Source of the DNA: Ascidiella aspersa
Lineage: Eukaryota
Direction: 5' to 3'
NCBI GenBank assembly: GCA_963924565.1
Contig: OZ004614.1
Location: forward strand, 5,270,001-5,334,000
Length of the DNA: 64,000 nucleotides
Both the position numbers and the translations under genes were made by a program. Below, one piece after another: positions 935 to 63,008 of this stretch. Within the stretch, counting starts at the first letter, position 1, and each line of letters opens with the position of its first letter. The notes under the pieces were generated by a model that did no database searches, was not told where the DNA came from, and saw nothing but the letters and a program-made list of their open reading frames with translations.

Positions 935-3900
935 ATGAAAGGTTCTTGAAAGTTTTTTACCGCGGAAATCTAAAATTTTGTTTTTTGCTTTTTCAAAAGG
1001 GCGTCATACGTTGACGTCACAATGCAAAAAGACTCCATAAATTCGGTCCAAAAAATGTACAATGAAATGGACACAACATACAGCGCAAAACCGTTTATTT
1101 TTTAATTAAACTGTTTCCTTTGAAAAGTCCATTACTTTCTAGAAACATTTTCATTGGGCCTTGATGGACATCTTAAAACTACCTGGTTTAGATAAAAGGT
1201 TCGGGCAAAGGAATCCTAAGCATGCTGTATTTTACATCACATTTTTTTTCTTAAACTATTTTTTGTTTTCTCTACTGTTACTCCATATTTTTCTGTTTTC
1301 CTTTAAAAACACAGTTTTGGTAATTGTTTTTCTTATAATCTTAACAATTTTCAGGTCATTATTTTATTTTGTTGGCTATTCTTTCAAAAGCTGTCCAAAG
1401 GTATCAAACTTTGTGTATTAAAAGTTTTTTTCGCCTAATTTTGCTTGATAAACTTCCCTTACAACTAGGTTGGCGAACCATGTGGCCGGATCAGTAAGGA
1501 AACGACAACCGTCGTATGTTGTAAAGCATGGTTTATGATTGCCAGCATTTGGGGCAACAATATAGTTCAGCTTTTCTGAACTTGACAACCATGACTGACC
1601 ATTTGTGGTTTGTGGTTGCATTTTTACCGTATTTCTGCAGCAAAATACCTTGGTGCACTTTAACATCGATAAATCTATAATCCGACTGGGAAATTGATCA
1701 GCGACTAAACAAATCACGTAAAAAATCCACAATCGTATGCGCTCCTGTGCTGGTGGTGTTTCTTAAATGCAAATATTAGAATTTTGATTGCGAATAATTT
1801 GGGCTCCGCATTATCTTTAAGTTACTACGGAAAGGCCTTAAACAAAAGCAACATTTATATCGTATCCCATGGCTTTCATTTAATAGCAAATAAACTTTTG
1901 ATAGTTCCACTCGTTTATGTTTTGTATTTACTGGGCAATTGTTGTTGACTTTCATCCTAACTGTTATATAGCGCGCAGTTTTTAACCGATAATATTTTTA
2001 ACGGCAATATTTTATCGCTTTTTGTGCTTTACTTGTCCGATGCAAGTGCGGATTGTTTCACATTCGGTTTCTTCAGTGTACTGTAGATTATACTTTTTTG
2101 TCTTTAAAATCATTGCTTTTTACCAAATACATTTGGTACCAGCCAAAAAAAAAACGGTACGACTTTTGTTCTTTACCAGTAATAATTCCACAAAAAGTTG
2201 TGGTTAGCTTTTAAAACAGTTTATTTGTTGCTATCAATAGCACACGAAAAGATCAGCCTAAAAACGAAAGTTATAAAAAATCACAAAGCGAGAAGGCTGT
2301 TTTTATAGAAACTTTGTCACGTACCTTTTTTATTGGCCGACTTGCAAAATAAATGTTTTTTTCTCTTTCGACGAACTTTTCATGACATATTCAGACACTG
2401 ATTAGCTCCTCTAAACATTAAAACATTGACGAAACACTACCTGGTATTTTTGTACTCTGTATGTAGCATTCTTCTTTACCGGAGTGTTAACAATGCGTAA
2501 CGAACCGCCGCCCATAAGTGTACAAACATTGTAAACAACAGTAAAATGAAAGCATCCGTCCAAAACAGTTGTTTTTAACTGGCGGCGCCCAACAATTTTC
2601 AAGGGGGTGCGAGCTCTACTCTAATATTTGAATTTTTATAATGATTTTATTGGTTCCATGTTGCGTTTGTTGTTAAATTTGCTTTCATGCTGTCCTATGC
2701 TTCGGATCAAAATTACGCTTGTGTAGATATAAACTGAAGAAAAACGGTTCATAATTTTGCGATTTGCGAACTTTATTTCGCTAATATGTGTTAATAGTTT
2801 CTTGTTTTTTGGGCAATATTTGCTACTTATTACGACCGATTTAGGAAGTTTTTAATCACAACAATATATTTAATCAATTTAAGTCAACAATTCTTATCAA
2901 AACTTGGTGGTTGACGAACGCAGAAAGCGGACGTAATTCCACACGATTATGAATTATCAACAAAACAAAACTGCAAAAATGTATTGTGGGTGGTGTGTAT
3001 TAGGTTGCGGAAAATGTACAAGTTGTGTGAAAGTTGAATATCTGGATTGCGCTGATCGCTGCTAATTTTGTTTGTTCTTCTATGTAACAAGCAGCATAAT
3101 AAAAAAAAACGTTTGCTCTTTTAAACTTATTTGAAAATGAATTATTTTTCAATCAATTTCAAGGTTTATCTTAGTTGTAAATTAAACGAAAAGAAAAACA
3201 AATTCGCTTTACGCAGCTAAAAATGGGTTGGGGGCGTACAATGTAATTCGTTGATATACCTATGAAGTACATTCCAGTGCATCATATACTATAATTAAGC
3301 CTGCAATGTGTATTAACCTCATATGGCTTCTTTATGTGAGCGTTAGCACAGATCAACAAGCTTCCCATAAAAGGCCTGGCGGTGCCTTCGGGCATCGTCC
3401 ATAAATAACTGGCAGTTGCATATTTGCTGTTGAACTAACGACGGCATGAAATAGGCTGCCAGGTTCTGATTTGAGGGGACAATTACATACGAGTGTACAG
3501 TAGCCGATGCCTGATTACAATTGTATTTTATTTTCGTCCCAGATTCAAAAAAAAGTCAGGTAAACGTCTTGTGGCAAAGAAGACAGTTTAAATATAACGA
3601 TGCTGGTACAGATACAAGGCAACTGTAGCTGCGGAATTACACCCAAAGTAAAACGATATGGGCTATATAAAAATATAGTTTCATTGCAAGAATATTTGTT
3701 GTTCCTAATGTTGACAAAACTCAAACAAGAAAATTTGAAGACGTATGTAGTTTTGTAGGTTTATACGCTCAATACATATTATTTCAGGTTGGTGGCAGAA
3801 ACTAAAATTGACGTCTTTCACTCTTTTATAACGCAGATTTGCAGTTTTCAGTTAATAATCTCACAAAATGCATACAGCTTTATTAAACAATGTGTCTTTA

Positions 3901-5136
3901 GTAAACAATGTGTAAACGTTTCACACAACTAAATATGGGTAGCCGCACTTACACTGTGCCCCATTTTTATCAATGGGGTTTAGGATTTAAATAATTAAAA
4001 TAAAGCAATCCTGGGTTTAGAAAAGTCGAAGCCGCCAATTTTAGCTTGTAATAAACAGCATCTCAGAACCAACGTGCGTGGTATACTTTAGAAGTATAAT
4101 AGTTGGAAAGGACATAAGAACAAAATGGATGTTTTTCAGTTTAAGTAGTTTATGTTAATGTAAGAAATGTTGGCTCTAAGGTTGTTACTTCGCCTAGCTA
4201 CATTTTGACAGCCGCTCTTAAGACTGTGATTACAGGGCGAGCGGATATGTCAGTAATACGCATAACACACATCGACACGTTCATAGTCTGTTGTTCATTA
4301 TCTCTGCGCGTGGTGCATCCGTATTGAATGACACTTTAATCAATTAATAATCTGTAGCGTACAACAGCTTGGTGTTGTAAAGGGGATGTGTATAAAACTG
4401 TTGTTTGTTCAATTCTGTCGCGCCTGCAATAAACGTGATACAAACGATACATGTCCTGTCGAAACCAAGCGGATTCATTGCTCGATATAGCGGTATAGCG
4501 TAGATAGCGCAATACAATTTTAAATCGAGGAGGACATGGTATGGAAACTTGTAGAGATTAATTTCCACTGTGAAACTGTTTTAAAAGTATATTGCTGTTT
4601 TAAAGCTTGAAATAACTATCAAAGCACATTATAACATGTATACCGCATTATGTAAACGTTCAAAGAAAGTTTTATGCAATTTTAGGCCGTAATGGTTATG
4701 CTGTAAATAATTAATAAGATAATATCAAAACAACCATAGGGACGGATTCTTGTCTGCAACTAAAATGAATATTTTTTCTTCACAAAAGTTCGTTGTCAAA
4801 AAGTTAGCTCTTTTTATGTTTTAATTGAATTAGAGGGGTCAAAACTTTTTACAGTTGCTTCTTACAAAGAATGTGGCATAGGCCTACATAAGAATTTGCA
4901 TTTTGGCATTTATTTCGTTACAATTGCCTAGAAGTTTGCTATTCGATTTGAAAAAGCTTGGCAATAAAAGTGATAATCCAACAATAGTAGAATGACACCA
5001 AACAGTAGGTCGCTATTCTTCTGAGCAGAGTCTGCTTTAACACTTCACATTTATTTTCAATAGCAGGAAGGCTAAACTAATAGGTAGCTAAACAAGCACT
5101 TACGAATAGTAATTCCGGATAACTTTTAAAATTTAA

Positions 5137-8100
5137 ATGGAGATCATAACTGTGGAAGCTGTGCTGATAGCTGCTTTGTCGAGCCTCTACATACCAGCAA
5201 CCTGCAGCCCTTCAGTCGACACCAATACAAGGTTAGATGACAAGCACGATTGTCCTATCAGTTGCACTTGGCGACAGGAAACTTGCATCACTGAAGCCCA
5301 GATGTGCGACGGCGAACCCGATTGCGCTTATGAAGACGAGAAGTATTGCGTTGAGTGCAAGAACGACGCGTTGTTGTGCGGGACGGCGTGTATCTCTCAA
5401 GCCAATATCTGCTCAGAGTTTTACGGAGTCGACAAATCTCAATGCGTCGGTCGCACAGACGCACTGAAATGCGCGAACACATGCCCGAGTGGATGGTGGT
5501 CGTGTCAGTCAGGTAACAACACTTGCATTGCTCACAGTTTGGTTTGTGACGACAGGACAGACTGCGACGACGGCAGCGACGAGTCAAACTGCGAAACTTG
5601 CCCCGACGATCGGCCCTGGAAGTGCGTCAGCGGAAGTCGGTGCATAAATCAAAGTCGTGTTTGCGACGGTAACGCGAACTGTAGTGACAGAAGCGATGAG
5701 ACCAACTGCACGATTTGCCCCAAAGCTCGGCCCTGGAAGTGCAAATTTGGAACTAAATGTATCGCCCAAAAACAGGTTTGCGACGGCGTAGAGGAATGCG
5801 AAAACGGTGGCGATGAATTGGATTGCACAAACTGCCCGGATAAACGATCATGGAAGTGTAAGACGGGAACCCGATGTATCGATGCAAGTTTGGTTTGCGA
5901 CGGCACCTTTAATTGCGAGGACCGTAGTGACGAGTCGAACTGCACAAGCTGCCCCCAAGATCGACCTTGGAAGTGTACAGACACAACTAGCAAGTGTATT
6001 CGCGAAAGTAAGTTGTGCGACGGCGAACATGACTGCAGCGACGAAAGCGACGAGTCGAACTGCACAACTTGCGCCAAAACAGCGTGGAAATGCAAATCGG
6101 AAAACAAGTGCATCAAGCGAACAGCTGTTTGCGACCTCATTCCAGACTGCGCCGACTCGAGCGACGAAAACTGCAAAAAAAATTGTCCGGAAGGCGAGTT
6201 TCGGTGCTTGGACGGAAGCAACTGTATTCCGAACGAGTGGAAATGCGGTGGCAGGTTCTGTTTGGACAACAGCGGCAGGCGAAACTGCACCTGCAAGAAC
6301 TACGAGAAAATGTGCGAGTGCTTGGACGGAAGCATTTGTCCGCCCACCGGCCAATGTGTTTTCGATAAATTTCTGGCCGACGGCTACAAGCACTGCCATG
6401 GCGGAGAGGACGAACCGTGTGAAAACATCGCCGAGGGAGTAATGCTCTGTTCCGACGCTAGACACAAAAACATCCTGCAGTCATTTCAGAACTACAGAAA
6501 CTCTACCTGCTGCAAGATCCACCGATCGCAACGGGATAACCGAGATGAGGTGGTGGTAACTAGAAGTTGGCTGTGCGTTAAAACTGGAGATTGCCGCTCC
6601 TATTACTTTTGTAACGAGAACAGAGCGCTTCCCACTTGGCACTTCTGTAGCAACCACTTCGATCCAGAGTGCAAGGATTCGATCAGCGGCTTCGGGTTCA
6701 AGTGCGCCGGACCCAGCAACACGGGAGTGTGCATTTTGCCTCAAATCAATCTCTACGACAACACGGCGCAGTGCTTAGACGAGTCAGATCTATGTTTCGT
6801 CGATGGCAAGTTCAAATGCTTCCTGTGCTTGGACAAGCGACTCGTCATATCGCAAAGCCAGGTTTGCGACGGGGTGGTCGACTGCTACGATCTTTCCGAC
6901 GAGTGCTTGTGCGGAAATCAAACGGTTTGCGACGATATCCTGGGCAACGCTAGGGACACTTGCCCTTCCAATCAAATGCACTGCCGCAACGAAACGGACT
7001 GCGTTGATATGGACAGAGTGCTGTGCAACGAGAGCACAAACTGCGAAAGCAATTCCACACGGCAGCGATGTCACCACGGTTTGCAAGATATAAGCGGGGG
7101 GAATGAAACAGTGACTTGCTACAACACCGCATTCAACAACACGCGCAAATTGGTGCGAGCGGTGAAATGCGATGGAAGGCCCGAATGCTGGGATTTGTCG
7201 GACGAATGTTCCGGCTGCCAAAGTCCTCCAGCCTTGTGTAACGACTCGTGTGTTGTCGTTAAATCGCAATCCGGACCGGTGTGTCTCGGATCGCCCAAAC
7301 TCGCCGGGCCTTTCATATGCGCCATTAATGAAACGCTTCTCTGCCCAAAGCGCTACATATGCTCCAACGGTGACCTCACGAGCATTGACGTCAATCTCTT
7401 TTGTGACGGCATAGCAGACTGCGACGACGGCTCCGACGAACTCGAAACGCGTTGCAACGCGACACGGTTTTATTGCCGCAACAAGAAGCCGATTTCCGTG
7501 GCAAAGAAATTCGTTGAAGACGGATTCAAGCAATGTTCGGACGGAAGTGACGAATGCCCGGCTGTCAGTAAGCGAAACTCGATCTTTTCCAATCAAAAGG
7601 AAATGATCGCGAACCCCTTTTTCAGGGCTTGCTTTTGGATTATGGGAAGTTTAGCTTGCGTGTTTAACCTGCTAGTTTTTGGCACCACCTTTAAAGAATT
7701 TTTTCTCCATCGTGATGATAACAACGTGCTGAAAGAAAGCACACACGTTTTTATAATGAGTCTGTCGGCTGCTGACTTTATGATCGGTTGTTATCTGCTT
7801 GCAATCGCTGTCAAGGGCCTTCAGTTTTCGGGTGATTACTGTTCGGTGGATGCTGCTTGGCGCACAAGTTCGACTTGTGCCGGGTTGGGATTTACACTGG
7901 TAGCAGCTTCCCAAATCAGCGCGTTCACAATGACAGCAATGACCGCCTTTCGCCTCTACACTGTGTGCAACCCATTTAACTCCAGATCGCTTAAAATGAA
8001 GTGGGTCTATTTGAGCTGCGTTAGTTGCTGGGTTTTAGGTTTTCTTTTAGCCGCTATTCCGTTGTTTCACTATTCGTCTGGTTATTTTGTTGCCTACGTT

Positions 8101-8727
8101 TGGTTTTCGTCTAGATTTTTTCGATCGGACACAATATCTTCTTACGCCATGTTTCAACTGGCGCACAGAATACAACGCAACTTAACCAACCCCACTTGGT
8201 TTGACGTGACACGGCTGATAGGCAAGACCTTTCCCAACCTTCCAATAACTGGCATCTTTGGTTATTATGGCGAAACTAGTGTTTGCATGCCCAGACTCTT
8301 CGTTTCTGTTAACGACCCTTCCTGGCAGTACTCTGTGCTTCTTATCACGCTTAACTTTACCATGTTTATTTTCATGCTTGTTTCGTATGTTATGATTTAT
8401 ATACAAAGCAACAAAATGAGCAAAGCAAGACAGAGTCAAGTGAATAGCAATATGCAAAAACGTATCTCTCGTTTGCTTATTACTGATTTTTGTTGCTGGA
8501 TCCCGCTGTGCGTTTGCGGTTTCTTGGCGGTAGCTGGTGTTCCCCTTACTAACGATGTTTACATTATCAGTGCTGGTATTTTGTTGCCCATCAACAGTGC
8601 TTTAAACCCGCTGCTATACTCCACGTTTCTAAAACAAATGTTCACTCGAATTAAAAAGCGTGCGAGCTCTCATAGTCAAAAGACTACCAGGCAAACTGAA
8701 ATGGGTGTAGTTGGCACACATAGCTAA
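5137..8727 (+). CDS. LDLa-repeat GPCR (GRL101/RXFP-like 7TM, no LRR), copy 1, intact, intronless, 1196 aa
   Basis: Signal peptide; ~15-16 LDLa-like modules (CD..DC.D.SDE..C); hinge SIFSNQKEMIANPFFRACFWIMG; TM2 SLSAADFMIGCYL; TM6 TDFCCWIP; TM7 LPINSALNPLLY. Confidence 0.93.
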   Translation: MEIITVEAVLIAALSSLYIPATCSPSVDTNTRLDDKHDCPISCTWRQETCITEAQMCDGEPDCAYEDEKYCVECKNDALLCGTACISQANICSEFYGVDKSQCVGRTDALKCANTCPSGWWSCQSGNNTCIAHSLVCDDRTDCDDGSDESNCETCPDDRPWKCVSGSRCINQSRVCDGNANCSDRSDETNCTICPKARPWKCKFGTKCIAQKQVCDGVEECENGGDELDCTNCPDKRSWKCKTGTRCIDASLVCDGTFNCEDRSDESNCTSCPQDRPWKCTDTTSKCIRESKLCDGEHDCSDESDESNCTTCAKTAWKCKSENKCIKRTAVCDLIPDCADSSDENCKKNCPEGEFRCLDGSNCIPNEWKCGGRFCLDNSGRRNCTCKNYEKMCECLDGSICPPTGQCVFDKFLADGYKHCHGGEDEPCENIAEGVMLCSDARHKNILQSFQNYRNSTCCKIHRSQRDNRDEVVVTRSWLCVKTGDCRSYYFCNENRALPTWHFCSNHFDPECKDSISGFGFKCAGPSNTGVCILPQINLYDNTAQCLDESDLCFVDGKFKCFLCLDKRLVISQSQVCDGVVDCYDLSDECLCGNQTVCDDILGNARDTCPSNQMHCRNETDCVDMDRVLCNESTNCESNSTRQRCHHGLQDISGGNETVTCYNTAFNNTRKLVRAVKCDGRPECWDLSDECSGCQSPPALCNDSCVVVKSQSGPVCLGSPKLAGPFICAINETLLCPKRYICSNGDLTSIDVNLFCDGIADCDDGSDELETRCNATRFYCRNKKPISVAKKFVEDGFKQCSDGSDECPAVSKRNSIFSNQKEMIANPFFRACFWIMGSLACVFNLLVFGTTFKEFFLHRDDNNVLKESTHVFIMSLSAADFMIGCYLLAIAVKGLQFSGDYCSVDAAWRTSSTCAGLGFTLVAASQISAFTMTAMTAFRLYTVCNPFNSRSLKMKWVYLSCVSCWVLGFLLAAIPLFHYSSGYFVAYVWFSSRFFRSDTISSYAMFQLAHRIQRNLTNPTWFDVTRLIGKTFPNLPITGIFGYYGETSVCMPRLFVSVNDPSWQYSVLLITLNFTMFIFMLVSYVMIYIQSNKMSKARQSQVNSNMQKRISRLLITDFCCWIPLCVCGFLAVAGVPLTNDVYIISAGILLPINSALNPLLYSTFLKQMFTRIKKRASSHSQKTTRQTEMGVVGTHS

Positions 8728-11641
8728 ATTTATTTTTCACGTTTTGTCAAAAGTATATTTTTAGGGGTTATTTTTTGACGTCACTGTATGTTATTTATTA
8801 TCTGTATAAAAAAACCTTGTAATGTCCAACATAATGTTAAACTTTCCCATTATCTCCGTTTGGTTTATACTGCGTCGAAGTTTTCGTGCGTCGTAATGTT
8901 ATTGATCCCCTAAGTCGCATAAATATATGCATATATTTATTTATATTTGTTCTATACACGAATCAAGTATAATCCATTGTGTAACTTTCCATATACTTGT
9001 GGTTTGGTTGGTTTTCTTCTCTTCTCCGTATTTGTAATTTTAAACACAAAGTTTGTTCACAAGATATCTCTTCTGAATTGGTAAATATAGTACAAAACGC
9101 GCAACATATAGCATTGAGTTTGGTAAGGTTGCCGTTAATAGCTGGCAGCTTTGATGTTTAACAAAAAGTGAAAATGTTTAATATCTTTATGAGAAATTAC
9201 TTACATGACGATAATCAAGGATACAGCGTCTTGGTTAATTCGCCTTAAAAGCCCATGCAATGCCGCTTATTCACCTTAAGAGCCGGCCCAGTTCTAGGCT
9301 CGGCACCAACTGACGAACTGAATTCGACTGAATTGACAGTTGTTTAACACTTCAGAAAAATAAATATGGAGATAATATCGATGTCATCTAAACTGGAAAT
9401 TAATGCAGACTGGCCAATTAAAAGTGGCTTTTGACACAGCCAATTATAATTGTATTTGAAATATTTCAAAAATATTTTGTTTTCTTTGTATCTGTAGTAA
9501 GACGTTTGCTTACTCGCTAAACCAGGGTTGTCATGGGCAACCTTCTTCAACCTATAGCTGCTTGTGGTCCATGTAACAAGCAGCATAATAAAAAAAAAAA
9601 AAAAACATTTGCTCTTTTAAACTTATTTGAAAATGAATTATTTTTCAATTTCAATGTTTATCTTAGTTGTAAATTAAACGAAAAGAAAAACAAATTCGCT
9701 TTACGCAGCTAAAAATGGGTTGGGGGCGTACAATGTAATTCGTTGATATACCTATGAAGTACATTCCAGTGCATGATATACTATAATTAAGCCTGCAATG
9801 TGTATTAACCTCATATGGCTTCTCTATGTGAGCGTTAGCACAGTTCAACAAGCTTCCCATAAAAGGCCTGGCGGTGCCTTCGGGCATCGTCCATAAATAA
9901 CTGGCAGTTGCATCTTTGCTGTTGAACTAACGACAGCATGAAATAGGCTGCCAGGTTCTGTTTTGAGGGGACAATTACATACGAGTGTACAGTAGCCGAT
10001 GCCTGATTACAATTGTATTTTATTTTCGTCCCAGATTCAGCCTATTTAGTTTGAAAAAGTCAGGTAAACGTCTTGTGGCAAAGAAGACAGTTTAAATATA
10101 ACGATGCTGGTACAGATACAAGGCAACTGTAGCTGAGGAATTACACCCAAAGTAAAACGATATGGGCTATATAAAAATATAGTTTCATTGCAAGAATATT
10201 TGTTGTTCCTAATGTTGACAAAACTCAAACAAGAAAATTTGAAGACGTATGTAGTTTTGTAGGTTTATACGCTCAATACATATTATTTCAGGTTGGTGGC
10301 AGAAACTAAAATTGACGTCTTTCACTCTTTTATAACGCAGATTTGCAGTTTTCAGTTAATAATCTCACAAAATGCATACAGCTTTATTAAACAATGTGTC
10401 ATTAGTAAACAATGTGTAAACGTTTCACACAACTAAATCTGGGTAGCCGCACTTACACTGTGCCCCATTTTTATCAATGGGGTTTAGGATTTAAATAATT
10501 AAAATAAAGCAATCCTGGGTTTAGAAAAGTCGAAGCCGCCAATTTTAGCTTGTAATAAACAGCATCTCAGAACCAACGTGCGTGGCATACTTTAGAAGTA
10601 TAATAGTTGGAAAGGACATAAGAACAAAATGAATGTTTTTCAGTTTAAGTAGTTTATAGTTAATGTAAGAAATGTTGGCTTAAAGGTTGTTACTTCGCCT
10701 AGCTACTTTTTGACAGCGGCTCTTAAGACTGTGATTACAGGGCGAGCGGATATGTCAGTAATACGCAAAACACACATCGACACGTTCATAGTCTGTTGTT
10801 CGTTATCTCTGCGCGTGGTGCATCCGTATTGAATGACACTTTAATCAATGAAAAATCTGTAGCGTACAACAGCTTGGTGTTGTAAAGGGGGTGTGTATAA
10901 AACTGTTGTTTGTTCAATTCTGTCGCGCCTGCAATGAACGTGATACAAACGATACATGTCCTGTCGAAACCAAGCATATTCATTGCTCGATATAGCGGTA
11001 TAGCGTAGAAAGCGCAATACAATTTTAAATCGAGGAGGACATGGTATGGAAACTTGTAGAGATTAATTTCCACTGTGAAACTGTTTTAAAATTATATTGC
11101 TGTTTTAAAGCTTGAAATAACTATCAAAGCACATTATAACATGTATACCGCATTATGTAAACGTTCAAAGAAAGTTTTATGCAATTTTAGGCCGTAATGG
11201 TTATGCTGTAAATAATTAATAAGATAAAATCAAAACAATCATAGGGACGGATTCTTGTCTGCAACTAAAATGAATATTTTTTCTTCACAAAAGTTCGTTG
11301 TCAAAAAGTTAACTCTTTTTATGTTTTAATTGAATTAGAGGGGTCAAAACTTTTTACAGTTGCTTCTTACGAAGAATGCGGCATAGGCCTACATAAGAAT
11401 TTGCATTTTGGCATTTATTTCGTTACAATTGCCTAGAAGTTTGCTATTCGATTTTAAAAAGCTTGGCAATAAAAGTGATAATCCAACAATAGTAGAATGA
11501 CACCAAACAGTAGGTCGCCATTCTTCTGAGCAGAGTCTGCTTTAACACTTCACATTTATTTTCAATAGCAGGAAGGCTAAACTAATAGGTAGCTAAACAA
11601 GCACTTACGAATGGTAATTCCGGATAACGTTTAAAATTTAA

Positions 11642-38900: not shown

Positions 38901-39552
38901 TTCGTCTGGTTATTTTGTTGCTTACGTTTGGTTTTCGTCTAGATTTTTTCGATCGGACAGAATATCTTCCGACGCCATGTTTCAACTGGCGCACAGAATA
39001 CAACGCAACTTAACCAACCCCACTTGGTTTGACGTGACTCAGCTGATAGGCAAGACCTTTCCCAACCTTCCAATAACTGGCATCTTTGGTTACTATGGCG
39101 AAACTAGTGTTTGCATGCCCAGACTCTTCGTTTCTGTTAACGACCCTTCCTGGCAATACTCTGTGCTTCTTATCACGCTTAACTTTACCCTGTTTTTCTT
39201 CATGCTTGTTTCGTATGTTCTGATTTATATACAAAGCAACAAAATGAGCAAAGCAAGACAGAGTCAAGTGAATAGCAACATGCAAAAACGTATCTCTCGT
39301 TTGCTTATTACTGATTTTTGTTGCTGGATCCCGCTGTGCGTTTGCGGTTTCTTGGCGGTAGCTGGTGTTCCCCTTACTAACGATGTTTACATTATCAGTG
39401 CTGGTATTTTGTTGCCCATCAACAGTGCTTTAAACCCGCTGCTATACTCCACGTTTCTAAAACAAATGTTCACTCGAATTAAAAAGCGTGCGAGCTCTCA
39501 TCGAAGCACTACCAGGCAAACTGAAATGAGTGTTGTTGGCAGGGATAGCTAA
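35968..39552 (+). pseudogene. LDLa-GPCR copy 5 (most divergent), single nonsense codon
   Basis: Colinear and in frame apart from TGG>TGA at 38017-38019 (RPEC*DLSDEC vs RPECWDLSDEC). Confidence 0.88.
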
Positions 39553-54085: not shown

Positions 54086-54702
54086 GTACGTGTTCAATTA
54101 TATACATCGTAAACCAATATTTAAATTAAACTGTTAAAAAAACGCTTGACTTAAACAACAACATTTGCTCCGTAAACCCAGTTGACTCTTCGTACCAGAA
54201 TGCCCAGGTAATGGATTCATCTTAGTGACTTTACCGACAGTTATCAACGCTGCGGTAGTGCTAATGGATCGTCAATAGTGCATTTTATATAATTGATCCA
54301 AAGCGGACTGACTGCACTACAAACGATATTCAACCAATTTAACATGGTGGTTTACTAAGTTAGATTGTATGATTTTGTGTTGGACAGTTGTTATTATAAC
54401 AAAGCGCAGCAATTTCAAAACCGTCGTGTTTATCCTCTTAAAGGGCGTTTACGAAAATGTTTGATTTGTTTTTATAACGCTTAGAATTATTGAAAGATAA
54501 ATAAGGAATTAAAAGCCATAAAAAAACTATTTGTGAGAAAGTTGAAGAGTCGCCGCATATTGTAGTTTGCAATAGCCACTTGTCGGCTAAAATTTCCATA
54601 AAATGTTACGTTTTAATGATATAACAGAATTGTAACAAAGCATAAGTTGTCCAGCTAACTTTAAAAACACTGTTGCTTAAACGTTCAACCATTACAGGTA
54701 GT

Positions 54703-57700
54703 ATGTCAAACTATGCAGCAAGTCAAAGCACTGTAACAGTCCAGTCAGTTGTAATGGACGCCAGCAGCCCTTCGTCTCACAACTCTTCAAGCATCACCAT
54801 GCAAAACTTCACGACTCCGGACGAGGCAGCAACTTTCGCGAGTGGAGATTTCTATTCAGGAAGTGGGGCAGTTTCCCTGCAAAGGAACAGTAGCCTTCTT
54901 GGCTCAGCCGTAGCCGCCGGGAGTATTCCTCTGATATCTTTTGGAGCGAATGCTAAAGCGGTGGTGTCGAAAGCTGACCAAAACTTGACTGGAAACCAGC
55001 AGATGCTGTATCTCACAAAGTCGTGTGGATTCCCAACCTTCTGCTCAAACTTGGCCTACGAGCGTTGTGCTTTGACTGAGTTAAATCAGTGTAGCGAGTG
55101 TAGCACGGGCCGGGCCTGGGCATTCTTGGCCGGAGTTCTGGTTCTGGCTTTTTCCATTATGGCGGGAAACGCAATGGTCATCACGGTGGTGAGAAAAAAC
55201 GGAGGAAAGAGCATTTTCGACAAGATCAAGACCTCACTTGCGGTGGCCGACATGTTGGTTGGTAAGCATACGAGCACTTAAGTCGGTGTTTTTTTAATGA
55301 CTTTACTTGATTTAACTTAAGTATTTTGGGGGAGTTTGCCTTTACTTGGACATGCTAAATTTTGATTAAATTTTCATCCCTATTTTGTTTTTTGAAACAG
55401 TATCAGCAAATAAATTTACATGGTTAAAATGAAGTGTTTCGTTTAAGTATGTTTTGTAAAAAAATTGATCTATTTATCCGAATTTTCACATAAATCAAAT
55501 CGCTTGATATGTTGCGTTTTTGTTTCATTTTTTAGTTCAGGTATTGTTCATGATCGGACTAGTTTAAATATTAATATAACTTAACGTTTTATTTTATAAC
55601 AAGAACGTGACTTAAAGTTGACTCGCTCTAATTGTGACTTGACTGGGACTTGACATGCGCAACTGATGACTTGGACTGGGACTTGACTTGTTATTTATTC
55701 AAAAGACTTGAATTTGACTTAAGTTATTTTACAAATGACTTGACTGGGACTTAAGTCTTTTTGAAATGACTTGTTTATAACACTGGGAATAAGTACAAGA
55801 ACAGTTGGGAAACACTCATATAGTATGTGAGGCTGTTATTTGTGTTCAAGAATACTGCTTCACCTTTAATTTGCTATCTTTTTAATTTATTATCATCACT
55901 TTTAAACTGAAAAGGGAAAAAGACAGTTTACTCTTTAAACTTTATACATTTGCATTATAGTTATAGAAGTGCTTAACATCACTATCTTTTTCACTTACTT
56001 TATTTTAATTTCAAATTATCTAATCACATTTTGAAACTAATTGATGTTCAAGAGAACCAAATATTGCCCTCATTTTGCATATGTCTATTTTACAACGTTG
56101 ATGAATAAAAGGTTCTCTTTTATATTGTTGTACAGGGCTTCAGATCAGCCTAATCGTCCCGCGCAACTTCAGCTGGGTGCTGCGCAGCACGTCGGTAGAG
56201 GTTTATGAAAAGCAACTGGGATTACTCGGCTCCCTACAGGCGTCTTTTGGAGGAATAGCCCTTCTTTTCTGCTTCGGTTCTTCACTCAATCACTTGGCGT
56301 ATCTCAGCCTTCAGCGCTTGTACGCCGTCAGCCGACCGATATCCTATAAGATGCAGGAAGATTGGCACATCTTCGTGGGTCTTGGAGTTGTCTGGGGCTG
56401 CAGCTTGATTTTCGCCACACTTCCAGGTTATTGTTATTAGTAGGGCGAATATTTTTTGACCTAAAAAATAGGAAATTTTAACCTGCAAAATTAAAATTTT
56501 GAAAAATTTTAACCTAAATATAATTTATTTTGACAAAATTTTGACCTGTTAGAAATACATTGATTTAAATGAGCTAGGCGACATTAATCAAGCGTTTTTT
56601 ATACCGTATATTGCTCTAATAAAGATAAAATACGCTTAAAATGACTTTAAACACAAATCAAAACTTAATTGTTTTGATAAAATTGAACGATAAACATCAA
56701 AAAAAAAAAAAAATGAACGACGAATTTCAAAAAGCTGACTATATATTCTTTTAATTTTGTATACGATTTATGTGCATTTTTATTTGATTTTGAAAAAATA
56801 TTCCCCTATAGTTATTAGGGTAAAATGAGGGTTTGATGCAAAGCTTTCTTTGGCTCGAACCAATTATTCAAAATCCGTTTTTCAAGTTATTTTTTATACA
56901 AAACTACAGAAACAATTACACAAACAATTTGCTGAATAAGGCCTATATGGCAAAATAACGCTTGGAACTGTGTGGAAAGGATATGGGACGATCGGGGGCC
57001 ATCGGTCTGGCAACGGCCTTTTTGGTGTCGGCGTTAGGGTGCCACTGTTTTGGCACCAGATTATTTGTCCAAGCAGTTTGGGGTTAGTGGTGGGTAATAG
57101 TAGGGGTTAGACATTGGGTTGGGGTAAAAAGTATTCGGACTTTAGTGCGGGGAAAATTATTAGGAGAGTTTCAGCGTGGGCTGCTCGGAAAAGCACCATT
57201 GAATCATCGTTTGTGTAGGTCACAAACGTTATCCCGATATTCAACCCTGCTTAAATCAGCTATATCAAGCCATTTGATTTGTTTGCATGTAGTATATTAC
57301 GCAAATCGATTACTAGTTGATGAAAATATTTTGACCCAAATTTATTCAAACAGTCGCCCTTAGTTTATTACTGTTTCTATACAAATCCTTTTGGATAGCC
57401 TTCATTTCGTACAATAGCGTAGCTTACCTTTATTTACAATTATGTTCAAGGTTTTACGAAAACCATTTGCAGCATTTTCTGCTAGCTACATGCACAAGAA
57501 AAGCTTACAGTCCAAAAACTAAAATCAATATGAATGATTTATTCAGGAATACATATTTTGCCTTTTATTTACTTTTAATTTATCATTTTTTTTGCTGATG
57601 ACCCGGCCCCCGAAGTGTTTTATTGTTACAGAAATCTCGAGCTAAATTTATTTTTTCCTCCTAGGATAAACATAATTTTTACTTAAAACGGACGATCTCG

Positions 57701-62554: not shown

Positions 62555-63008
62555 TATAAAACCTGCGGGCGACAGGCCTATGTTAAACACCACCCTTAAT
62601 TGGCCATTCTGCATTAATATCCATTTTATATAAAATCGACCTTTTATATCATGTTTAGTTTTCTGAAATGTCAAACAACGGTCAGTATAGTGAAACTTTA
62701 TTCGTAAGTCACTGCCAAGCGTAAAATTGGGCCGGCTATTAAGGTAATTAGGCGTCGGTTTTAAGGTGAATTAATCTATAGACGCTGTATCTTTTCTTAT
62801 CGTGGTGTAAGTGGTTTCTAATAAAGATAATAAACATCGTCACTTTAAGTTAAAAATCTTTCCTACCGGCTATTTACGGCAAACTTAGCAAACTAAATGC
62901 TACATGTTGCACGTTTTGTACTATATTTACAAATTCGGAAAATAATTCTTTCTTGTGAATTACCAGTGTGTTTAAAATCATGAAGCCGGAGAAGAAAAAC
63001 CAAAACCC
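62555..63008 (-). repeat. Inverted, diverged copy of the LDLa-GPCR 3' flank
   Basis: Reverse complement aligns by eye with 9001-9440 and 39830-40265 (e.g. aaatatagtacaaaacg.gcaacat.tagcatt; ttaatgcaga.tggccaattaa). Confidence 0.8.

What the first reader, a model, noticed from the sequence alone, without database searches (positions are those of the whole stretch)
6340..6675. Focal hypervariable patches in specific LDLa modules
One module reads CVFDKFLADGYKHCHGG / CVHDILLANGYKNCPGG / CVDDSQLADGYKDCRGG / CVYYNWLANGFKDCPGG / CVLNFRLSDGTKHCWGG in copies 1-5, all different with Cys and Gly fixed. Similar patches: CIKRTAVCDLIP / CINRRFVCDLIP / CIKRRAVCDLLP / CIERKAVCNFLP / CIEPSAVCDNHQ, and NHFDPEC / NRFDLGC / NRFKPRC / NRFDFER / NRFDFEC. 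Other modules and the 7TM are almost invariant. The changed residues lie between the third and fifth cysteines, the ligand-contact face of LDLa modules. Inference: CDR-like sites under diversifying selection.
Basis: partly seen in the sequence, partly recalled or inferred. Interest (0 to 1): 0.8.

Follow-up and report, generated by a model that had tools for sequence, protein, structure and literature searches.

The report
Variable binding pockets in tandem receptor genes
A sea-squirt genome carries eight side-by-side copies of a receptor gene that are kept almost identical except for a few short islands at predicted ligand-binding positions; this looks like selection for varied binding sites, but accelerated protein change is shown firmly only for islands outside the ones reported.

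Summary
All three sets of peptide strings are in the window as written. Patch A has 6-12 nucleotide differences per 39 nt, against 3-8% in its flanks.

The genes are tandem, intronless members of the ascidian LDLRR-GPCR family (LDLa repeats plus a relaxin-receptor-type 7TM). This family was described in Ciona in 2008. There are five copies in the window and eight at the locus. Four of the eight are broken as assembled: copies 2, 4 and 5, and one copy upstream of the window.

The copies form a fine mosaic made by gene conversion (Rm = 68). The variable codons sit at the Trp and Asp pocket positions of LDLa-like modules.

The CDR-like reading is only partly supported:
- Silent divergence also rises in and next to the patches.
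- Within-patch N/S ratios are 0.71 (A), 1.97 (B) and 0.85 (C).
- The site-model signal for patches A and B (omega about 14, codons 411 and 412) has p about 0.05 under a null with fine-scale local histories.
- Patch C shows no signal and is not in an LDLa module.

Best reading: old cassette-like pocket variants kept diverse by selection and reshuffled by conversion. The scan has one other note, on this same window, and it agrees.

The parts
5137..8727 (+). Copy 1: intact intronless LDLRR-GPCR gene, 1196 aa. Signal peptide, about 14 LDLa-type modules, then a 7TM.
   Evidence: ORF and translation. Pfam Ldl_recept_a x10 (1e-54) and 7tm_1 (3e-16).
11642..15148 (+). Copy 2: disrupted as assembled. 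TA insertion near 13456, 8-bp duplication near 13732, 94-bp deletion after 13798.
   Evidence: Nucleotide alignment. Stops in frame.
19948..23436 (+). Copy 3: intact, 1162 aa. Lacks one 40-codon LDLa module.
28296..31788 (+). Copy 4: disrupted. 1-nt deletion at 28916 and 4-nt deletion at 30439. Also carries Cys>Arg in patch C.
35968..39552 (+). Copy 5: in-frame TGG>TGA at 38017-38019. The most divergent copy in the window.
6361..6399 (+). Patch A in copy 1 (codons 409-421), in module M10, a degenerate LDLa-like module with Ala in place of Cys4. Homologous positions: copy 2 at 12866-12904, copy 3 at 21046-21084, copy 4 at 29402-29440, copy 5 at 37189-37227.
   Evidence: The core 18-mers of copies 1-3 are unique in the genome.
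6115..6144 (+). Patch B in copy 1 (codons 327-336), in module M8, a bona fide LDLa module.
6229..6261 (+). Further variable island (codons 365-375) in module M9.
6655..6672 (+). Patch C in copy 1 (codons 507-512), in a Cys-rich stretch without LDLa signature. Its haplotypes are shared among copies.
5266..5436 (+). N-terminal hot region (codons 44-100, modules M1-M2). The only place where omega above 1 survives the stringent null.
7627..8646 (+). 7TM domain of copy 1, nearly invariant among copies. Of the LGR/relaxin-receptor type.
   Evidence: dN 0.006-0.026. N/site 0.048. Best PDB sequence matches include RXFP1, LHCGR and TSHR.

Best explanation
The window holds five of eight tandem, intronless paralogs of the ascidian LDLRR-GPCR family. 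Each has an ectodomain of about 14 LDLa-type modules, without LRRs, on an LGR/relaxin-receptor-type 7TM.

Pervasive short-tract gene conversion keeps the 7TM, the membrane-proximal modules, the canonical modules M3-M7 and even the 5' flanks nearly identical. A few short islands stay highly divergent: M1-M2, M8, M9 and M10. These islands fall on the positions that in solved LDLa modules form the aromatic and acidic ligand-docking pocket.

My reading is as follows. The islands are cassette-like pocket variants, older than their homogenised flanks. Selection for different ligand specificities preserves them, and conversion reshuffles them among copies, so the array encodes receptors with different binding pockets on a common signalling chassis. 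The array turns over by birth and death; half the copies are broken.

Shown here: the array, the family, the mosaic, the islands, and their mapping to pocket positions by alignment. Inferred: that selection maintains the diversity, and that the variable modules bind ligand while the invariant proximal modules and 7TM transduce. Accelerated replacement (omega above 1) is robustly shown only for the N-terminal modules.
For: - Family and architecture.
- Eight copies, four of them intact.
- Mosaic structure: nearest neighbours switch every 75-150 nt. Hudson-Kaplan Rm is 68, with four intervals inside patch A.
- Hot and cold modules, and hot positions relative to Cys4 (-5 to -2, +2 to +4, +7).
- Mapping to pocket positions: codon 412 aligns with Trp, and 415, 417 and 419 with D, D and D of an LRP1 module.
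- The islands are far more divergent than their flanks.
- Linked silent divergence peaks beside hot codons, as expected for old maintained variants.
- Cassettes are shared across otherwise different copies.
- No extant donor outside the array.
- Site models: the zone gives 2dlnL = 14 and the N-terminus 37.7. The N-terminal signal lies far beyond the recombination-aware null, 60.4 against a null maximum of 27.5.
- In another individual's DNA reads, depth on copy 1 falls to 0-1.3x in 6216-6463 against 10-30x in the 7TM. The reads laid at patch B carry the copy-3 variant.
Against:
- The per-site test with site-specific dS is not significant.
- Within-patch N/S is at or below 1 for A and C.
- Four of eight copies are disrupted, so part of the change is neutral decay.
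- Non-scaffold LDLa positions are the least constrained in any case.
- There are no ligand, expression-site or structural data. Only 7 RNA reads were laid, all in the 7TM, and the AF2 model failed.
- A second tandem cluster of the family shows no hypervariable codons. It is much younger, so this is a weak control.
Confidence: 0.6

Rival explanations
1. Neutral or relaxed drift plus recombination artefact. Under this view the islands are simply the unconstrained loop positions of degenerate modules, in an array that is half pseudogenes. They are older tracts that escaped conversion by chance, or because their own divergence blocks heteroduplex formation. No selection for diversity is involved.
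For: - Silent divergence rises with replacement divergence in and next to the patches.
- The M0 omega of the patch A block on its own tree is 0.97.
- A nearly-neutral null with local trees reaches the observed LRT in 3 of 58 replicates.
- The FEL-like test is not significant.
- Four of eight copies are broken.
- M10 and the N-terminal module fail the Pfam LDLa threshold.
Against: - The scaffold residues inside the same modules (Cys, Gly, Asp-Glu) are invariant in all eight copies, so the modules are still under constraint.
- The islands sit at the same codons in every copy, within sequence that is otherwise 92-100% identical.
- The N-terminal LRT is far outside the same null.
- The equivalent non-scaffold positions of M3-M7 and M11-M14 hardly vary.
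Confidence: 0.25
2. A local mutational process. Multi-nucleotide replacement events would be the cause: templated micro-conversion from donors absent from this haploid assembly, or targeted hypermutation. These would hit the codons and their immediate neighbours, with selection only filtering the results.
For: - Most hot codons differ at 2-3 positions, even between copies that are about 97% identical.
- Silent changes are enriched only within 1-3 codons of hot codons.
- Kappa is about 1 in the hot segments against 3.0 in segment 426-520.
- Four-gamete breaks occur every 5-15 nt inside patch A.
Against: - No donor 18-mer is found in the 308-Mb assembly, and no 12-mer in the array or in 22 paralog loci.
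- There is no nucleotide-specific pattern such as A-only or C-only changes.
- Invariant scaffold codons are interleaved with the hot ones.
- No such mechanism is known in tunicate germ lines (my own knowledge).
Confidence: 0.1
3. Assembly or alignment artefact. The patches would come from mis-assembled or collapsed paralogs.
For: In an independent individual's short reads, depth on copy 1 is very low across 6216-6463 at 97% likeness.
Against: - Four copies keep intact 1162-1199-aa frames through the patches.
- The variation respects codon and scaffold structure.
- There are no N runs.
- Reads and contigs from other runs support the flanks, the 120-nt module-deletion form and the copy-3 patch B variant.
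- The low depth is equally explained by allelic or copy differences between individuals.
Confidence: 0.03

Closest known systems
Ciona LDLRR-GPCR cluster (Kamesh et al. 2008, PMC2396169)
   Same: Tunicate lineage. N-terminal tandem LDL-A repeats with no LRRs. Rhodopsin-type 7TM similar to INSL3/relaxin receptors. Best database matches of the 7TM are Ciona, Phallusia, Styela and Clavelina proteins with LDLa plus 7tm_1.
   Different: Only 14 confirmed members with 1-10 repeats were described in Ciona. This genome gives 310 first-look candidates, 116 of them scored at E below 1e-93, and these copies have about 14 modules. Tandem concerted evolution and hypervariable pocket islands were not described there.
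RXFP1/RXFP2 (LGR7/8) relaxin-family receptors
   Same: The 7TM matches RXFP1 at E = 1.7e-20. An LDLa module sits in the ectodomain. In RXFP1 the LDLa module is needed for activation (cited in PMC2396169).
   Different: RXFP receptors have one LDLa module plus LRRs that bind the hormone. Here there are no LRRs and many LDLa modules, and the paralogs vary in LDLa pocket residues.
Lymnaea GRL101
   Same: Multiple LDLa repeats on an LGR-type 7TM. Public annotation calls tunicate relatives 'GRL101-like'.
   Different: GRL101 also carries LRRs and is not a tandem multigene array (PMC2396169).
Ligand-binding complement-type repeats of LDLR/LRP
   Same: Module M8 matches LRP2 and LDLR repeats. M10 aligns to an LRP1 repeat so that the variable codons fall on the Trp position and on the Asp positions after Cys4. 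In solved complexes these dock ligand lysines (my own knowledge: Fisher, Beglova and Blacklow 2006).
   Different: In LDLR and LRP these pocket residues are conserved. Here they are the most variable positions, and M10 lacks Cys4 and fails the Pfam threshold.
Multigene receptor arrays that combine gene conversion with diversity at binding sites (MHC peptide-binding region, vertebrate V1R/V2R/OR clusters, plant NLR LRRs)
   Same: Tandem birth-and-death with many pseudogenes, mosaic conversion, a conserved signalling part, divergent binding-site codons, and linked silent diversity peaking at those codons.
   Different: The protein fold and the lineage differ. This is a resemblance in evolutionary mode only. 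No function (chemosensory, immune or allorecognition) is shown.

Membership tests
Ascidian LDLRR-GPCR (Kamesh 2008) | Rhodopsin-family 7TM | tested here: met
   Pfam 7tm_1, E = 3.4e-16 and 59.9 bits against a cut-off of 30.5.
Ascidian LDLRR-GPCR (Kamesh 2008) | TM region similar to INSL3/relaxin and other LGR receptors | tested here: met
   PDB sequence search: RXFP1 1.7e-20, LHCGR 4e-20, TSHR 1e-19, FSHR 3e-18, LGR4 1.5e-7.
Ascidian LDLRR-GPCR (Kamesh 2008) | Tandem LDL-A repeats in the N-terminal ectodomain | tested here: met
   Pfam Ldl_recept_a in 10 stretches, E = 1e-54. Module table.
Ascidian LDLRR-GPCR (Kamesh 2008) | No leucine-rich repeats | tested here: met
   No LRR family among Pfam hits at E up to 0.01 on the whole protein, or up to 1 on the five ectodomain pieces searched, which cover all of it except residues 113-299.
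Ascidian LDLRR-GPCR (Kamesh 2008) | Tunicate lineage and closest relatives | tested here: met
   Best named hits are Ciona intestinalis, Phallusia mammillata, Styela clava and Clavelina lepadiformis proteins carrying PF00057 and PF00001.
LDLa module (PF00057), applied to the patch A module M10 | Reaches the Pfam gathering score | tested here: not met
   Residues 376-432 give no Pfam family at E up to 1. There is only a weak phmmer match to LRP1 CR (2knx), E = 0.011.
LDLa module (PF00057), applied to the patch A module M10 | Six cysteines (C1-C3, C2-C5, C4-C6) | tested here: not met
   Cys4 is Ala (Ser in copy 5) in all eight copies.
LDLa module (PF00057), applied to the patch A module M10 | Acidic calcium cage (D..D..D-E) | tested here: inconclusive
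   D425 and E426 are invariant. Position 415 is D or N, and 419 is H, D or N, depending on the copy. Copy 3 has the full set.
LDLa module (PF00057), applied to the patch B module M8 | Pfam score, six Cys and acidic cage | tested here: met
   Pfam 3.8e-13. Matches LRP2 and LDLR repeats. The module reads CIKRTAVCDLIPDCADSSDENC.
LDLa module (PF00057), applied to the patch C stretch | Any LDLa signature | tested here: not met
   Residues 430-562 give no Pfam family.
Sites under positive (diversifying) selection, omega above 1 | Site-model LRT significant with uniform dS | tested here: met
   Segment 321-425: 2dlnL = 14.0, codons 411 and 412. Segment 1-110: 37.7, 11 codons. Segment 426-520: 0.
Sites under positive (diversifying) selection, omega above 1 | Signal survives recombination and local rate variation | tested here: inconclusive
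   Zone: 0 of 50 under the 3-block null, but 3 of 58 under the 10-block null. N-terminus: 0 of 56, observed 60.4 against a maximum of 27.5.
Sites under positive (diversifying) selection, omega above 1 | No parallel rise of synonymous divergence | tested here: not met
   S/site is 1.30 in patch A, and 0.89 at invariant codons adjacent to hot codons against 0.18-0.25 far away. FEL-like alpha is high at 409, 411 and 412.
Sites under positive (diversifying) selection, omega above 1 | Sites exposed on the ligand face | tested here: inconclusive
   Alignment puts them at Trp and Asp pocket positions. The AF2 model has mean pLDDT 40.7 and is unusable.

The most novel reading that the evidence does not exclude
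The LDLa pocket islands could be a germline combinatorial recognition system. In this reading, ultra-short conversion tracts reassort a population-wide pool of pocket cassettes among tandem paralogs and alleles of a GPCR family with more than 100 members. That would give this tunicate, which lacks vertebrate-type odorant receptors, an individually variable repertoire of receptors for environmental, microbial or allogeneic ligands. LDLa modules would then serve as variable recognition units, in the way LRRs do in VLRs or NLRs.
Probability: 0.15. Interest if true: 0.8.

Novelty: new member of a known kind. Interest (0 to 1): 0.45.

Why it matters
Tunicates lack the vertebrate odorant-receptor families, and how they sense chemicals or non-self is largely open. 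A family first described with 14 members in Ciona has at least 116 scored matches here, most of them in long open frames. In this array it varies at the residues that would contact ligand, while the signalling half is held constant. That makes these genes concrete candidates for a diversified sensory or recognition repertoire.

The case is also a caution. Standard site models call omega about 14 at two codons, but the signal largely dissolves once fine-scale gene conversion and linked silent divergence are modelled.

Tried and rejected
- AF2 on residues 300-432 with the eight-copy alignment gave mean pLDDT 40.7, so no structural mapping or fold search was attempted.
- FEL-like per-site tests have too little power with eight sequences.
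- A donor search found nothing beyond chance. I searched 12-mers across the array and 22 paralog loci, and 18-mers with one mismatch in the whole genome.
- A first parallel simulation run timed out because the machine has effectively one CPU.
- I took a second tandem cluster (C2:35.36-35.79 Mb) as a control. It has no codon with four or more states, but its tree is about six times shorter and its ectodomain still gives 2dlnL = 10.2. It is therefore neither a clean negative control nor a replication.
- RNA reads were too few (7, all in the 7TM) to assign expression to any copy.
- The literature held here has nothing on selection or function for this family beyond Kamesh 2008.
- Pfam finds nothing in the ORF at 54673-55281.
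- I rejected the assembly-artefact reading (intact frames, codon-structured variation) and intragenic module-to-module conversion (no shared 12-mers).
Full report
**What is there**

The window contains five head-to-tail repeat units of about 6.4-8.3 kb. Each carries one intronless gene of about 3.5-3.6 kb. Copy 1 (5137-8727) encodes 1196 aa: a signal peptide, ten Pfam-detected LDLa stretches (E = 1e-54) and a rhodopsin-type 7TM.

A search of the window's own 308-Mb genome found three more close copies just outside the window. One lies upstream on the + strand and two lie downstream on the - strand, so the array has eight members. I fetched and aligned all of them.

As assembled, four copies are intact: copies 1 and 3 and the two downstream ones. 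Four are disrupted:
- Copy 2 has a TA insertion, an 8-bp duplication and a 94-bp deletion.
- Copy 4 has -1 and -4 frameshifts.
- Copy 5 has TGG>TGA at 38017-38019.
- The upstream copy has an in-frame stop and a 1-nt deletion.

The window has no N. The gene has no introns, so no spliced model was needed.

**Family**

- The 7TM part finds only tunicate proteins with LDLa plus 7tm_1: Ciona, Phallusia, Styela and Clavelina, at 32-46% identity.
- Against solved structures the 7TM matches RXFP1, LHCGR, TSHR, FSHR and LGR4.
- This is the 'LDLRR-GPCR' cluster described in Ciona by Kamesh et al. 2008 (PMC2396169): tandem LDL-A repeats, no LRRs, a relaxin-receptor-like TM, and 14 confirmed members.
- In this genome the 7TM query gives 310 first-look candidates. 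Of these, 116 were scored, all at E below 1e-93, and most lie in open frames of 860-1400 aa. The family is therefore much larger here.
- I found no later paper on this family in the held library.

**Checking the observation**

Every quoted string is present. Patch A is codons 409-421 (6361-6399), patch B is 327-336 (6115-6144) and patch C is 507-512 (6655-6672).

The focal character is real:
- Between the young copies, patch A carries 6-12 differences in 39 nt. The 33 codons on either side differ by 3-8% (Poisson p 3e-5 to 2e-3 for five of six pairs).
- 21 of 24 codons with four or more amino-acid states lie in 18% of the protein (p = 4e-13).
- The N:S balance differs among regions (chi-square p = 1e-6).
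- The 7TM has N/site 0.048 and the canonical modules M3-M7 have 0.097.

A module-by-module table shows five hot modules (M1, M2, M8, M9, M10) and nine cold ones. The hot positions relative to Cys4 are -5 to -2, +2 to +4 and +7.

**Are these LDLa ligand-face positions?**

- Patch B is in a true LDLa module (Pfam 3.8e-13; LRP2 and LDLR matches).
- The patch A module gets no Pfam hit and has Ala or Ser where Cys4 should be. It aligns weakly (E = 0.011) to an LRP1 complement-type repeat. In that alignment codon 412 falls on the conserved Trp, and 415, 417 and 419 fall on the three Asp positions after Cys4.
- From my own knowledge of LDLR and LRP complexes, that Trp-plus-Asp set is the lysine-docking pocket.
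- Patch C lies in a Cys-rich stretch with no recognised family.
- An AF2 model of residues 300-432 from the shallow eight-copy alignment had mean pLDDT 40.7. Exposure could not be tested.

**Mosaic evolution**

- Nearest neighbours among copies switch every 75-150 nt.
- The Hudson-Kaplan minimum number of recombination events is 68 for eight sequences over 3.6 kb. Four of the intervals lie inside patch A.
- The 2-kb 5' flanks of copies 1-4 are 95-99.5% identical, yet coding dS between them reaches 0.04-0.11. This fits import of variation from the older copies by conversion within the coding region.
Copies 4 and 5 are 97.5% identical in 6533-6733, against 83.5% just before.
- With eight copies, patch C reduces to four haplotypes, three of them shared by two copies each. 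Patch A variants are partly shared as well: YD(N/D)W occurs in three copies, and one downstream copy combines elements of copy 3 and of the other downstream copy.

**Is it diversifying selection?**

I wrote a GY94 (F3x4) codon-likelihood program and ran M0, M1a/M2a and M7/M8/M8a on segments with their own ML trees. Results:

| Segment | Contains | M1a/M2a 2dlnL | p | omega class | Codons with posterior above 0.9 |
|---|---|---|---|---|---|
| 321-425 | patches A, B | 14.0 | 9e-4 | 13.7 for 2.2% of sites | 411, 412 |
| 426-520 | patch C | 0 | n.s. | none | none |
| 1-110 | M1, M2 | 37.7 | 6e-9 | 5.5 for 20% of sites | 44-46, 61, 64, 65, 69, 84, 90, 93, 95 |

- Tree-free minimum-change counts give S/site 1.30 and N/site 0.93 in patch A (ratio 0.71). 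Patch B gives a ratio of 1.97 and patch C 0.85.
- At codons whose amino acid never changes, silent changes per site are 0.89 next to a hot codon, 0.41 at 2-3 codons, 0.30 at 4-6 codons and 0.18-0.25 far away.
- A per-site test that lets dS vary finds nothing at 409-412.

I then simulated the nearly-neutral M1a model without any omega>1 class:

| Segment | Null design | Observed LRT | Null distribution | Replicates reaching observed |
|---|---|---|---|---|
| 321-425 | three block-specific trees | 15.5 | maximum 11.2 | 0 of 50 |
| 321-425 | 10-codon blocks, each with own tree and length | 15.5 | 41% above 5.99; 95th percentile 15.6 | 3 of 58 |
| 1-110 | 10-codon blocks, each with own tree and length | 60.4 | maximum 27.5 | 0 of 56 |

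The 10-codon-block design represents an old-cassette, intense-conversion scenario. Accelerated replacement is therefore robust for M1-M2, marginal for patches A and B, and absent for patch C.

**Other rivals**

- *Donors elsewhere.* The 12-mers across patch A are unique to each copy within the array and 22 paralog loci. The 18-mer cores of copies 1-3, with one mismatch allowed, occur nowhere else in the genome beyond chance. DNA similarity to the about 75%-identical paralogs only begins downstream of about 6640.
- *Relaxed constraint.* This alone does not explain why scaffold residues in the same modules are invariant, or why the equivalent loop positions of nine other modules hardly vary.
- *A block-replacement mutational process.* This cannot be excluded. 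Hot codons usually differ at 2-3 positions even between near-identical copies. Kappa is about 1 in the hot segments against 3.0 next door. No known mechanism or template supports it.
- *Assembly error.* This is unlikely given intact frames and codon-structured variation.

**Reads**

- In an independent DNA run of the same species label, depth at 97% likeness is 10-30x in the 7TM, where the paralogs cross-map. It falls to 0-1.3x across 6216-6463.
- Reads laid on patch B carry the copy-3 variant, not copy 1's. The islands, or the copies themselves, therefore differ between individuals.
- One RNA run gave only seven reads, all in the 7TM, so expression cannot be assigned to a copy.

**A second cluster**

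Eight intact 858-aa paralogs lie at C2:35.36-35.79 Mb. They have no codon with four or more states, against 24 in the window array. Their tree is about six times shorter, and their ectodomain still gives 2dlnL = 10.2. The cluster is neither a clean control nor a replication.

**Verdict**

The thing is a tandem, conversion-homogenised array of LDLRR-GPCR genes with short divergent islands at predicted LDLa pocket positions.

The most likely mechanism (0.6) is selection that keeps pocket variants different among paralogs. It acts on cassettes older than their flanks, and conversion reshuffles them. Nearly-neutral drift of loop positions plus a recombination artefact (0.25) and a local multi-nucleotide mutational process (0.1) remain open.

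These genes are new members of a known family. The hypervariable pockets and the size of the family in this genome are, as far as the held literature shows, undescribed.

Noticed in passing
whole genome G000 (e.g. C2:35.3-36.7 Mb, C6:1.3-2.4 Mb, C5:0.45-0.53 Mb): The LDLRR-GPCR family is very large here. There are 310 first-look candidates and 116 scored 7TM matches at E below 1e-93. Most lie in long intronless open frames and many form tandem clusters. Ciona was reported with 14 confirmed members.
   Followed up: partly
window 3079-5136, 9568-11641, 17877-19947, 26193-28295: The roughly 2-kb 5' flanks of copies 1-4 are 95-99.5% identical, which is more alike than synonymous sites of the coding regions (dS 0.04-0.11). 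Copy 5's flank is only 67-93% identical.
   Followed up: partly
window 5906-6025 (copy 1): A precise 120-nt (40-codon) LDLa module is present in copies 1, 2 and 5 and both downstream copies. It is absent from copies 3 and 4 and from the upstream copy. Reads and a contig from other runs show the joined form (skip 5905 to 6026).
   Followed up: partly
window 7143 (24-nt indel) and codons 666-669: A 24-nt insertion in copies 3 and 4 sits next to two more codons with four amino-acid states (668, 669), outside any recognised LDLa module.
   Followed up: no
window 9008-9439, 62578-63003 (-), 44-172: Part of the 3' flank of copy 1 recurs at 75-80% identity elsewhere in the window on both strands. It is probably a dispersed repeat.
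   Followed up: no
window 54673-55281 (+): A 202-aa open frame ends in hydrophobic stretches that by eye resemble the start of another membrane receptor. Pfam finds nothing.
   Followed up: partly
segments 321-425 and 1-110 against 426-520 of the coding alignment: The transition/transversion rate ratio (kappa) is about 1.0-1.4 in the hypervariable segments and 3.0 in the adjacent segment.
   Followed up: no
G000:C8:5247293-5249200 (about 20 kb upstream of the window): A more distant family member (56% identity in the 7TM, 1370-aa open frame) lies next to the array.
   Followed up: no
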